Source: Octopus bimaculoides (lineage: Eukaryota). Taken from it: a stretch of 32,015 nt of DNA. A program made the position numbers and the translations under genes. The stretch is from assembly GCF_001194135.2 (NCBI RefSeq), contig NC_069000.1, forward strand, positions 22,774,498 to 22,806,512, written 5' to 3'. Positions 1,455-2,050 of the stretch are shown piece after piece (within the stretch, counting starts at the first letter, position 1; every line of letters begins with the position of its first letter). Under the pieces are notes generated by a model. The model made no database searches. It was not told the DNA's origin and was given only the letters and a program-made list of their open reading frames with translations.

Positions 1455-1739
1455 TTCCTAATAGTATATGTTTCTTCCATCCAAATTAATGTATGATTTA
1501 GTGATTTGCTAATGTGTATACATAAAATTAATATAAACAGCAGGTTGCAATGTTTCATAAAAAGGAAAATGAGGATTGTCCTTAAATGTGACAAGGGAGT
1601 TAGAAAGAACCTACATTGCTAAAGAGCTAAAATGCACTAATGCTGTAGTCAATGCACATGAATGTAAATGTGTACACTAACAGGGACTTTAACTATCTGG
1701 AAAATAGAAAAGCAAGTCCAAAAGGTGCCAAACTTTTGG

Positions 1740-1834
1740 GCCAGTCTTAACTGATGAGGCAACTACAATTGCCAACTACAATTGCCAACTACAATTGCCA
1801 AAGCTGACACCAGTATTAAGAATTCTCGACTGGC
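1740..1834 (+). ncRNA. Type I hammerhead ribozyme motif, degenerate core (GAAA reads AAAG)
   Basis: Stem I tcttaa(1745-50)/ttaaga(1816-21) plus gccag/ctggc. CTGATGA at 1751-57. Stem II GGCAA/TTGCC. AAAG at 1800-03 in place of GAAA. Stem III CTG-acac-CAG. GUA cleavage triplet at 1813-15. Confidence 0.75.
1761..1799 (+). repeat. 13-bp tandem triplication (aactacaattgcc)x3 inside HHR stem II
   Basis: Three exact units at 1761, 1774 and 1787. Confidence 0.97.
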
Positions 1835-2050
1835 ATTTTTTGGACGATTAAGGTCCTTGTTAGTGTATATGTTTACATTTATGTATATTGACTACTGCAT
1901 TAGAGGATTCTAGCTCTTATTTCTAGTAATGTGTGTGTTTCTAACACCCTAGTCACATTTAGTGACAATTACAATTCTCCTTTTCAGTGAAACATTGCAA
2001 ACTGCTGTTTATATTAATTTCCCATATATATACATATATATATATATATA

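What the first reader, a model, noticed from the sequence alone, without database searches (positions are those of the whole stretch)
1525..2020. ~500-bp foldback element capped by a hammerhead ribozyme: a rod-shaped RNA with the HHR at its tip
Seen: arms 1525-1692 and 1848-2020 are inverted copies (about 80% by manual count), with an inner stem 1716-1730/1831-1845. The centre of symmetry is a complete type I HHR fold: stem I tcttaa/ttaaga plus gccag/ctggc around an 8-nt bulge, CUGAUGA, stem II GGCAA/UUGCC, stem III CUG-acac-CAG, and a GUA site at 1813-15. The arms are therefore a ~200-bp continuation of HHR stem I. The HHR is present on one strand only, so this is not two inverted Penelope pLTRs. 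Established: animal genomic HHRs are typically found in PLE pLTRs, retrozymes and satellite/SINE-like repeats such as Schistosoma Sm-alpha, usually with short stems. Rod-like self-complementary RNAs with ribozymes are typical of viroid-like RNAs. Inference: this may be an undescribed non-autonomous element (rod-type retrozyme, endogenised viroid-like RNA, or a foldback transposon that captured an HHR) whose transcript is long dsRNA nicked at the tip. This copy has AAAG instead of GAAA (G12A, A15.1G), so it is probably inactive; no TSD was identified.
Basis: partly seen in the sequence, partly recalled or inferred. Interest (0 to 1): 0.9.

Follow-up and report, generated by a model that had tools for sequence, protein, structure and literature searches.

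The report
Octopod foldback repeat with hammerhead-like tip
A real 496-base hairpin-forming repeat in an octopus-type genome has a tip laid out like a hammerhead ribozyme, but part of the catalytic core is missing, so this copy is almost certainly inert, and whether it belongs to a ribozyme-bearing family could not be tested here.

Summary
The foldback at 1525-2020 is real: the arms are 82% complementary and the RNA fold has z = -24. Its 65-nt centre has the order of parts of a type I hammerhead, on the + strand only: first core box, three helices and a cleavage triplet. This is rare by chance (6 of 2,000,000 shuffles between the fixed arms).

It is not a complete hammerhead:
- The second core box is absent (2 of 4 positions fit).
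- Loop 2 carries a 13-nt x3.2 tandem array.
- The ribozyme-competent fold is 8 kcal/mol worse than the best fold.
- No Rfam hammerhead model matches, even at E<=10.

No second copy turned up in the window, in 61 kb of Octopus vulgaris, or in any searchable collection. No eukaryote genome collection was available, so the family-level claims remain untested.

The last 33 nt of the arms (97%) are better kept than the rest (about 80%), as in MITE-type DNA transposons, but no target-site duplication can be read.

Best reading: an inert, solitary, non-coding foldback repeat. Its origin is either MITE-like with a hammerhead look-alike or relic, or a decayed retrozyme-like unit. Interest is moderate.

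The parts
1525..2020 (.). Whole foldback element (496 bp, GC 34.7%)
   Evidence: Inverted repeats. Self-inverted BLAST hit, E 1.4e-75. RNA MFE -230.4 kcal/mol, z -24.3. GC content.
1525..1557 (.). Left terminal inverted repeat, 33 nt, 97% complementary to 1988-2020
   Evidence: I3. Termini are 32/33 identical against 132/166 for the rest of the arms, Fisher p 0.012.
1988..2020 (.). Right terminal inverted repeat
   Evidence: I3.
1558..1692 (.). Left arm, inner part (about 80% complementary to 1848-1987, with small indels)
   Evidence: I1, I2; alignment; helix list.
1848..1987 (.). Right arm, inner part
1693..1715 (.). Stretch present in the left arm only. It forms an asymmetric internal loop with a 4-bp local hairpin.
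   Evidence: Gap block in the arm alignment; MFE helices.
1716..1730 (.). Inner stem, 5' strand. It pairs with 1831-1845 (15 bp including 2 G:U).
   Evidence: I6.
1831..1845 (.). Inner stem, 3' strand.
1740..1834 (+). Hammerhead-like centre, treated as one part. It holds helix I (1745-1750/1816-1821, with an 8-nt bulge at 1822-1829 and an optional 1740-1744/1830-1834 extension), the first core box (1751-1757), helix II (1758-1762 with 1795-1799), helix III (1804-1806/1811-1813, loop 1807-1810) and the triplet (1813-1815). It departs from a canonical type I hammerhead three times: two substitutions in the second core box and one tandem expansion in loop 2.
   Evidence: Sequence. Descriptor hit. 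Chance estimates. No Rfam hammerhead match. Fold energies.
1760..1801 (+). Tandem array: 13-nt unit x3.2, 100% identical, inside loop 2 of the hammerhead-like centre
   Evidence: TRF; the repeat finder D1/D2.
1517..1524 (.). Candidate target-site duplication TATACATA, left copy. Weak: low-complexity context.
   Evidence: The right copy is at 2029-2036, 8 bases beyond the end of the right arm.
2029..2036 (.). Candidate target-site duplication, right copy, inside the (TA)n tract
   Evidence: TRF 2024-2050.
2024..2050 (.). (TA)n microsatellite, 3 bases from the right end (a neighbour, not part of the element)
1224..1456 (-). Neighbouring SINE copy, 68 bp to the left and pointing away from the foldback (not part of the element)
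   Evidence: 88-92% identical to O. vulgaris locus L005.

Best explanation
A solitary, non-coding, AT-rich foldback repeat of an octopod genome, most like a MITE or foldback DNA element with 33-bp terminal inverted repeats. It is catalytically dead as it stands. The centre is laid out like a type I hammerhead on the + strand, but it lacks the second core box, has an expanded loop 2, and prefers a non-ribozyme fold. I therefore read it as a non-functional look-alike or relic.

Shown:
- the palindrome;
- the better-kept termini;
- the incomplete core;
- the absence of any Rfam ribozyme match.

Inferred:
- The element was placed by DNA-level transposition through its termini.
- If the locus is transcribed, the only molecular output is a long imperfect hairpin of about 200 bp. 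Such a hairpin would be a substrate for the cell's double-stranded-RNA pathways (editing, dicing), not a self-cleaving RNA.

I put the chance that the centre descends from a real hammerhead at about one half. That question is separate from how the element moved.
For: - The foldback is real and far beyond chance.
- The terminal 33 nt are 32/33 identical, against 132/166 for the rest of the arms (p 0.012). This is the pattern expected when the ends are kept by a transposase, not when two once-identical arms decay evenly.
- The element is small, has 34.7% GC and no ORF above 51 aa.
- Close inverted-repeat pairs are common in octopod DNA: 5 in 88 kb. One is another foldback that abuts (TA)n in O. 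vulgaris.
- The second core box is absent.
- No hammerhead or other ribozyme family of Rfam matches on either strand, even at E<=10 on 111 nt.
- The ribozyme-competent fold is 8.2 kcal/mol less stable than the MFE of the centre.
- If the well-kept termini mean the copy is young, the non-canonical core was already in its source. That fits a non-ribozyme.
Against: - The hammerhead-like layout is hard to get by chance. Between the fixed arms, only 6 of 2,000,000 shuffles of the centre do as well, and 260 pass a relaxed descriptor. In 80.6 Mb of shuffled window, none does as well.
- Helix sizes resemble canonical invertebrate type I motifs, which have a stable helix III capped by a tetraloop.
- Transition differences between the arms give G:U on the + strand 14 times and on the - strand 5 times. 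This hints at an RNA-level history on the motif-bearing strand (p 0.03 one-sided).
- No target-site duplication of a known DNA-transposon superfamily can be read.
- No second copy was found, so 'repeat family' is itself unproven.
Confidence: 0.45

Rival explanations
1. Decayed single unit of a retrozyme-like element. The source would be an RNA-borne, non-autonomous repeat whose roughly 470-nt RNA is a self-paired rod closed at one end by a type I hammerhead, with helix I continuing into the rod. It was copied into DNA once, opened at the far tip of the rod, and has been dead since. Relatives elsewhere in the genome would keep an intact core.
For: - Chance estimates for the motif are low.
- The motif is on one strand only, as in retrozymes.
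- Low GC, no coding capacity and a highly self-paired unit match the description of metazoan non-LTR retrozymes, which are known in a mollusc.
- There is an excess of G:U on the + strand.
- The element lies next to (TA)n, with a possible 8-bp duplication. That would fit 'TSDs larger than 4 bp, when present'.
Against: - It is not in tandem. The 313 bp to the left and 283 bp to the right within the gap-bounded block 1212-2303 hold no further unit, whereas tandem repeats define the family.
- The core is incomplete, with both substitutions in one 4-nt box while 37 other motif positions are intact. That is odd for even decay.
- The termini are better kept than the rest, which this model leaves unexplained.
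- At 496 bp the element is above the 170-400 nt reported.
- No Rfam match.
- The searchable literature reports no retrozymes in cephalopods.
Confidence: 0.3
2. Local inverted duplication. After a DNA break, the exposed strand folded back on a short self-complementary stretch (the present centre) and was copied. This made a palindrome in place, which has since diverged. No mobile element is involved.
For: - It is a single copy in everything that could be searched.
- No target-site duplication is readable.
- The centre is itself hairpin-prone.
- The flanks are unique.
Against: - Arms born identical should decay evenly, yet the termini are 97% identical against about 80% for the rest.
- Both outer ends stop at exactly symmetrical positions.
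- The hammerhead-like layout would be pure coincidence.
Confidence: 0.1
3. Two severely 5'-truncated copies of a Penelope-like element inserted head to head in a (TA)n tract, with the hammerhead coming from the pseudo-LTR.
For: - PLEs often carry an adjacent inverted 5'-truncated copy.
- They prefer (TA)n targets.
- They have hammerheads near their 3' ends.
- The element abuts (TA)n.
Against: - PLE hammerheads are minimal variants without helix III, and they occur in tandem. Here helix III is 3-4 bp and the motif is single.
- The motif sits on the symmetry axis, not once in each arm.
- No RT or endonuclease ORF lies nearby. The only RVT_1 fragment is 28 kb away.
Confidence: 0.04
4. Endogenised viroid-like or deltavirus-like circular RNA.
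For: A rod-like fold with a ribozyme-like motif.
Against: - No ribozyme motif on the opposite polarity.
- No ORF.
- No match in the viral contig scans.
- The ends are base-paired to the last base, with no terminal loop.
Confidence: 0.03
5. Assembly artefact: a chimeric foldback in a gapped draft assembly.
For: The block 1212-2303 lies between two N gaps.
Against: Artefactual foldbacks have near-identical arms. Here the arms differ at 35 positions and by 33 gap columns.
Confidence: 0.02

Closest known systems
Metazoan non-LTR retrozymes (type I hammerhead repeats expressed as self-paired circRNAs; Cervera & de la Pena 2020, PMC7229834; review PMC7761336)
   Same: One hammerhead-type motif per unit, on one strand. 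Low GC. Non-coding. The unit RNA is highly self-paired, so helix I runs into the rest of the molecule. Helix III is capped by a tetraloop, as in invertebrate motifs. The family is known in a mollusc, the mussel.
   Different: There is no tandem arrangement in the block that can be seen. The second core box is absent. Loop 2 is expanded. At 496 bp it exceeds the 170-400 nt reported. The ends are perfect inverted repeats. No relatives were found, and none is reported for cephalopods in the searchable literature.
MITEs and foldback-type non-autonomous DNA transposons
   Same: A few hundred bp long, AT-rich and non-coding. The terminal inverted repeats are better kept than the interior. The whole element can fold as a hairpin. 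It lies next to a TA-rich tract.
   Different: No readable target-site duplication and no assignable superfamily. No second copy was found. The centre carries a hammerhead-like layout that is rare by chance.
Hammerheads of Penelope-like elements (pseudo-LTRs)
   Same: Type I topology. An invertebrate host. Inverted truncated copies and (TA)n targets are typical of PLEs.
   Different: PLE motifs are minimal, lack helix III and come in tandem. Here there is a single motif with helix III on the axis of the palindrome, and no PLE ORF nearby.
Viroid-like and deltavirus-like rod-shaped circular RNAs with hammerheads
   Same: A rod-like self-complementary RNA with a ribozyme-like motif.
   Different: The motif is on one polarity only. 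This is genomic DNA with paired termini and no terminal loop. The core is incomplete, and there was no hit in the viral contigs.

Membership tests
Hammerhead ribozyme, type I | First conserved core box (cuganga in the published descriptor) directly 3' of the helix I strand | tested here: met
   CTGATGA at 1751-1757. The heptamer alone is not unusual: 6 in the window against 5.35 expected.
Hammerhead ribozyme, type I | Second conserved core box between helix II and helix III | tested here: not met
   The four bases between helices II and III fit the box at 2 of 4 positions. The descriptor hit is obtained only when this box is left free.
Hammerhead ribozyme, type I | Three helices around the core in type I order, with a cleavage triplet before the 3' strand of helix I | tested here: met
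   Helix I is 6 bp, helix II 5 bp and helix III 3 bp plus a wobble pair, and the triplet is at 1813-1815. Caveats: loop 2 is 32 nt because of the tandem array, and this fold is 8.2 kcal/mol above the MFE.
Hammerhead ribozyme, type I | Match to a curated covariance model (the Rfam hammerhead families) | tested here: not met
   No hit at gathering score, nor at E<=10 on 1500-2050 or on 1730-1840.
Hammerhead ribozyme, type I | Loop 1 / loop 2 tertiary contacts | not tested
   The tools gave no comparator sequences. The geometry (a bulge 6 bp from the core, and a 6-nt loop 2 in a single unit) is compatible, but that is not a test.
Hammerhead ribozyme, type I | Covariation in helices across relatives | not testable with these tools
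   No second copy is reachable.
Metazoan non-LTR retrozyme | Canonical type I hammerhead in each unit | tested here: not met
   See the rows above.
Metazoan non-LTR retrozyme | Head-to-tail tandem repeats of 150-450 bp, from dimers to multimers | tested here: not met
   No further unit lies in 1212-1524 or 2021-2303. Beyond that there are assembly gaps, so the test covers only this block.
Metazoan non-LTR retrozyme | Low GC, no LTR/PBS/PPT, non-coding, highly self-paired unit RNA | tested here: met
   GC is 34.7%. ORFs are at most 51 aa. z is -24.
Metazoan non-LTR retrozyme | Expression as linear and circular RNA | not testable with these tools
   No transcriptome data among the tools.
MITE / foldback DNA transposon | Terminal inverted repeats | tested here: met
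   33 nt, 97%. They are better kept than the interior, p 0.012.
MITE / foldback DNA transposon | Target-site duplication of fixed length at the ends | tested here: inconclusive
   Only palindromic TA / TTAA / ATTAAT inside the inverted repeat, or an 8-bp TATACATA offset by 8 bases on the right.
MITE / foldback DNA transposon | Multi-copy family sharing the ends | tested here: inconclusive
   None in the window or in 61 kb of O. vulgaris. That sample is far too small for a genome of gigabase size.
Penelope-like element pseudo-LTR | Minimal hammerheads (no helix III) in tandem, next to an RT/GIY-YIG ORF | tested here: not met
   A single motif with helix III. No RT lies within the block, and the RVT_1 fragment is at 30622-30933. 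Family features.
Viroid-like / deltavirus-like circular RNA | Self-cleaving motifs in both polarities | tested here: not met
   The descriptor hits the + strand only. No Rfam ribozyme on either strand.

The most novel reading that the evidence does not exclude
The element is one decayed member of an undescribed octopod family of 'hairpin retrozymes'. These would be dispersed units, not tandem ones, whose + strand RNA is a double-stranded rod of about 200 bp capped by a single type I hammerhead. The excess of G:U pairs on the + strand would be the trace of life as an RNA: selection for pairing, or A-to-I hyper-editing of the rod fixed by reverse transcription. Other copies would keep both core boxes.
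Probability: 0.2. Interest if true: 0.7.

Novelty: new member of a known kind. Interest (0 to 1): 0.35.

Why it matters
If relatives with an intact core exist, this would be the first hammerhead-bearing repeat described in cephalopods. It would also be an unusual architecture: a single ribozyme at the tip of a long hairpin, dispersed and not in tandem. That links retrozyme biology to the very active double-stranded-RNA editing of octopods. If it is a lone foldback with a look-alike centre, it is an ordinary piece of repeat DNA. It then mainly serves as a warning that a hammerhead-like layout without the second core box is not a ribozyme call.

Tried and rejected
- **Rfam, three ways** (whole window at gathering score; 551 nt and 111 nt at E<=10). 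No hammerhead or other ribozyme; only microsatellite-driven miRNA noise and a SNORD12 fragment.
- **Other copies in the window.** BLASTN with word size 7 gave only low-complexity hits.
- **Terminal 20-mer scans** of metagenome, viral and prokaryote-genome collections. Three hits, each limited to about 25 nt, so chance.
- **Centre pattern with a free second box** in viral contigs: 0 hits.
- **Protein-database trick** (element ORFs as queries, hoping that other copies had been called as genes): no candidates. Exact look-ups of element ORFs found nothing, and neither did the RT fragment.
- **SINE ORF as a probe.** Only 4 proteins came back, 3 of them from O. vulgaris. So the database holds few random octopod ORFs, and the negatives above say little about copy number.
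- **61 kb of O. vulgaris** fetched around those proteins: no copy, no hammerhead-like site, no Rfam hammerhead.
- **Flanks as probes for an empty site:** they are unique in the reachable data.
- **Literature.** No paper in the library links hammerheads or retrozymes with cephalopods, MITEs or foldback elements, and no printed sequence matches.
- **Rejected rivals:** assembly artefact (the arms are too different); hAT-type 8-bp TSD around a CAG... end (the flanking octamers are inverted, not direct); read-through from the neighbouring SINE (it points away).

Full report
**What is there**

The window is a gapped draft assembly of an octopod genome.
- It holds 13 N gaps and dense microsatellites.
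- It holds several copies of a SINE whose ORF matches 'hypothetical predicted proteins' of Octopus vulgaris.
- The SINE DNA is 77-92% identical to three O. vulgaris loci that I fetched.

The finding lies in a 1092-bp block (1212-2303) between two gaps.

**The foldback is real**

The repeat finder gives these inverted pairs:

| Left | Right | Length | Complementary |
|---|---|---|---|
| 1525-1557 | 1988-2020 | 33 nt | 97% |
| 1560-1606 | 1938-1984 | 47 nt | 81% |
| 1622-1705 | 1835-1918 | 84 nt | 79% |
| 1716-1730 | 1831-1845 | 15 nt | 87% |

- A global alignment of 1525-1750 with the reverse complement of 1816-2020 has 164 matches, 35 mismatches and 33 gap columns.
- As RNA the + strand folds at -230.4 kcal/mol (z -24.3) and the - strand at -214.5 (z -18.9).
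- The palindrome runs from the very ends, paired to the last base, inward to 1750/1816. It is interrupted by a 23-nt stretch present only on the left (1693-1715).
- The arms differ too much for an assembly artefact.

**The centre**

Positions 1751-1815 on the + strand read, in order:
- CTGATGA;
- GGCAA, a 6-nt loop, TTGCC;
- two more exact copies of a 13-nt unit (array 1760-1801, x3.2, 100% identical);
- four bases;
- CTG-ACAC-CAG;
- TA.

After this the palindrome resumes. With the second core box left free, a type I descriptor that I wrote hits this site and nothing else. That covers both strands of the window and 61 kb of O. vulgaris.

- The second conserved core box is not there.
- Helix II closes the junction only if GGCAA pairs with the last of the three TTGCC copies, around a 32-nt loop. 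The MFE pairs it with the first copy.
- The ribozyme-competent fold of 1716-1845 is -30.1 kcal/mol, against -38.3 for the MFE.
- No Rfam hammerhead model, nor any other ribozyme family, matches. This holds at gathering score and at E<=10 on 551 nt or 111 nt.

By established knowledge of the hammerhead core, a motif without the second box does not cleave. 'Complete type I HHR fold' is therefore not confirmed.

**Is the resemblance chance?**

- The heptamer alone is ordinary: 6 in the window, 5.35 expected.
- A relaxed descriptor (helix I >=5, II >=4, III >=2, second box free) is met 131 times in 80.6 Mb of dinucleotide shuffles. That is about 0.09 per window. No shuffle gave helices as good as observed.
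- With the arms fixed and the 65-nt centre shuffled 2,000,000 times, 260 shuffles pass the relaxed descriptor and 6 do as well as the real sequence.
- Close inverted-repeat pairs occur about 5 times per 88 kb of octopod DNA. That is on the order of 10^5 per gigabase-scale genome (my extrapolation). A genome could therefore hold a handful of relaxed chance cases, and roughly one as good as this.
- For one window the resemblance is very unlikely to be chance. For a large scan it cannot be excluded.
- The 'as good as observed' threshold was set after seeing the data.

**Two further clues point in opposite directions**

- The terminal 33 nt are 32/33 identical, against 132/166 for the rest (Fisher p 0.012). 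This is what terminal inverted repeats of a DNA transposon look like. It is not what even decay of two once-identical arms gives. If the copy is young, its non-canonical core was inherited, which argues against a working ribozyme family.
- Of the 19 transition differences between the arms, 14 read as G:U on the + strand, the strand with the motif, and 5 on the - strand. The MFE rods hold 12 and 5 G:U pairs respectively. The binomial p is 0.03 one-sided and 0.064 two-sided. This hints at a history as + strand RNA.

Both signals are weak.

**Ends and flanks**

- No target-site duplication can be read.
  - Inside the inverted repeat, only palindromic strings (TA, TTAA, ATTAAT) qualify, and these are uninformative.
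  - Outside it there is an 8-bp TATACATA at 1517-1524 and 2029-2036, offset by 8 bases on the right and lying in a (TA)n tract.
- The flanks are unique in the reachable data.
- The SINE 68 bp to the left points away from the element.

**Relatives**

None could be found in:
- the window;
- pattern scans of the metagenome, viral and prokaryote collections, which gave only 25-nt chance hits;
- the protein database, queried with element ORFs;
- 61 kb of O. vulgaris.

A SINE ORF, which must be very abundant in the genome, retrieved only four proteins. These negatives therefore say little about copy number. No eukaryote genome collection was available.

**Comparison with known systems**

- *Metazoan non-LTR retrozymes.* These are tandem repeats of 150-450 bp with one canonical type I hammerhead per unit and low GC. 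They are expressed as self-paired circRNAs of 170-400 nt and are known in a mussel.
  - This element shares the single-strand motif, low GC, lack of coding capacity and self-pairing.
  - It fails on the canonical core and on tandem arrangement.
- *PLE hammerheads.* These are minimal, lack helix III and come in tandem. That does not fit.
- *Viroid-like RNAs.* These would have ribozymes in both polarities. That is not met.
- *MITE or foldback DNA elements.* The size, composition and better-kept termini fit. The TSD and copy-number criteria are inconclusive.
- *Literature.* Nothing in the searchable literature links hammerheads or retrozymes to cephalopods or to foldback elements.

**Verdict**

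| Reading | Probability |
|---|---|
| Inert, solitary, non-coding foldback repeat, most likely placed by DNA-level transposition | 0.45 |
| Decayed retrozyme-like unit | 0.30 |
| Local inverted duplication | 0.10 |
| PLE head-to-head insertion, endogenised viroid-like RNA, or assembly artefact | together under 0.10 |

- The centre is a hammerhead look-alike or relic. I put the chance that it truly descends from a hammerhead at about one half.
- If transcribed, this copy would give a long imperfect hairpin and would not self-cleave.
- Interest is moderate (0.35).
- The novel reading is a dispersed 'hairpin retrozyme' family in octopods. It keeps a probability of about 0.2 and would merit about 0.7.

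Noticed in passing
window 56-420, 1224-1456, 3176-3344, 11870-12088, 13838-14263, 18390-18751, 27500-27809: Many copies of one SINE family, 77-92% identical to O. vulgaris loci. Their ORFs (90-137 aa) resemble proteins annotated as 'hypothetical predicted protein' in O. vulgaris, which are therefore probably repeat-derived mis-annotations.
   Followed up: partly
window 504-1211, 2304-3071 and 11 further N runs: 13 assembly gaps (5145 N), nearly all bordered by (TA)n or (CA)n microsatellites. The finding sits in a 1.1-kb island between two of them, so its wider context is not assembled.
   Followed up: yes
window 30622-30933 (-): A 103-aa ORF with a reverse-transcriptase domain fragment (RVT_1, E 1.6e-7). 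This is a retroelement remnant 28 kb from the finding.
   Followed up: partly
window 13990-14499: A 269-bp unit repeated 1.9 times at 99% identity, running into a gap at 14500. It overlaps a SINE-like match.
   Followed up: no
window 16004-16284 and 28003-28137; L006 17623-17916: A second dispersed repeat family shared with O. vulgaris (85-91% identical). In L006 it forms an inverted pair, 17660-17769/17990-18099.
   Followed up: no
L006 about 8862-9200 (O. vulgaris OX597820.1): Another foldback element: 114-bp arms at 86%, a 128-bp spacer, and a left end that abuts (TA)n. It has no similarity to the window element and no hammerhead-like centre.
   Followed up: partly
window 3855-5943: A long tract of ACC/CAC/CCA-type triplet repeats that gives spurious ORFs of 100-227 aa on both strands.
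   Followed up: no
L004 18201-18328 (-): A U4 spliceosomal RNA gene in the O. vulgaris locus (Rfam 69.8 bits, E 1.8e-13).
   Followed up: no
window 1525-2020, arm differences: In 11 of the 12 G:U pairs of the + strand rod, the base 5' of the G is A or U. This is compatible with, but far from proof of, an A-to-I editing footprint.
   Followed up: partly
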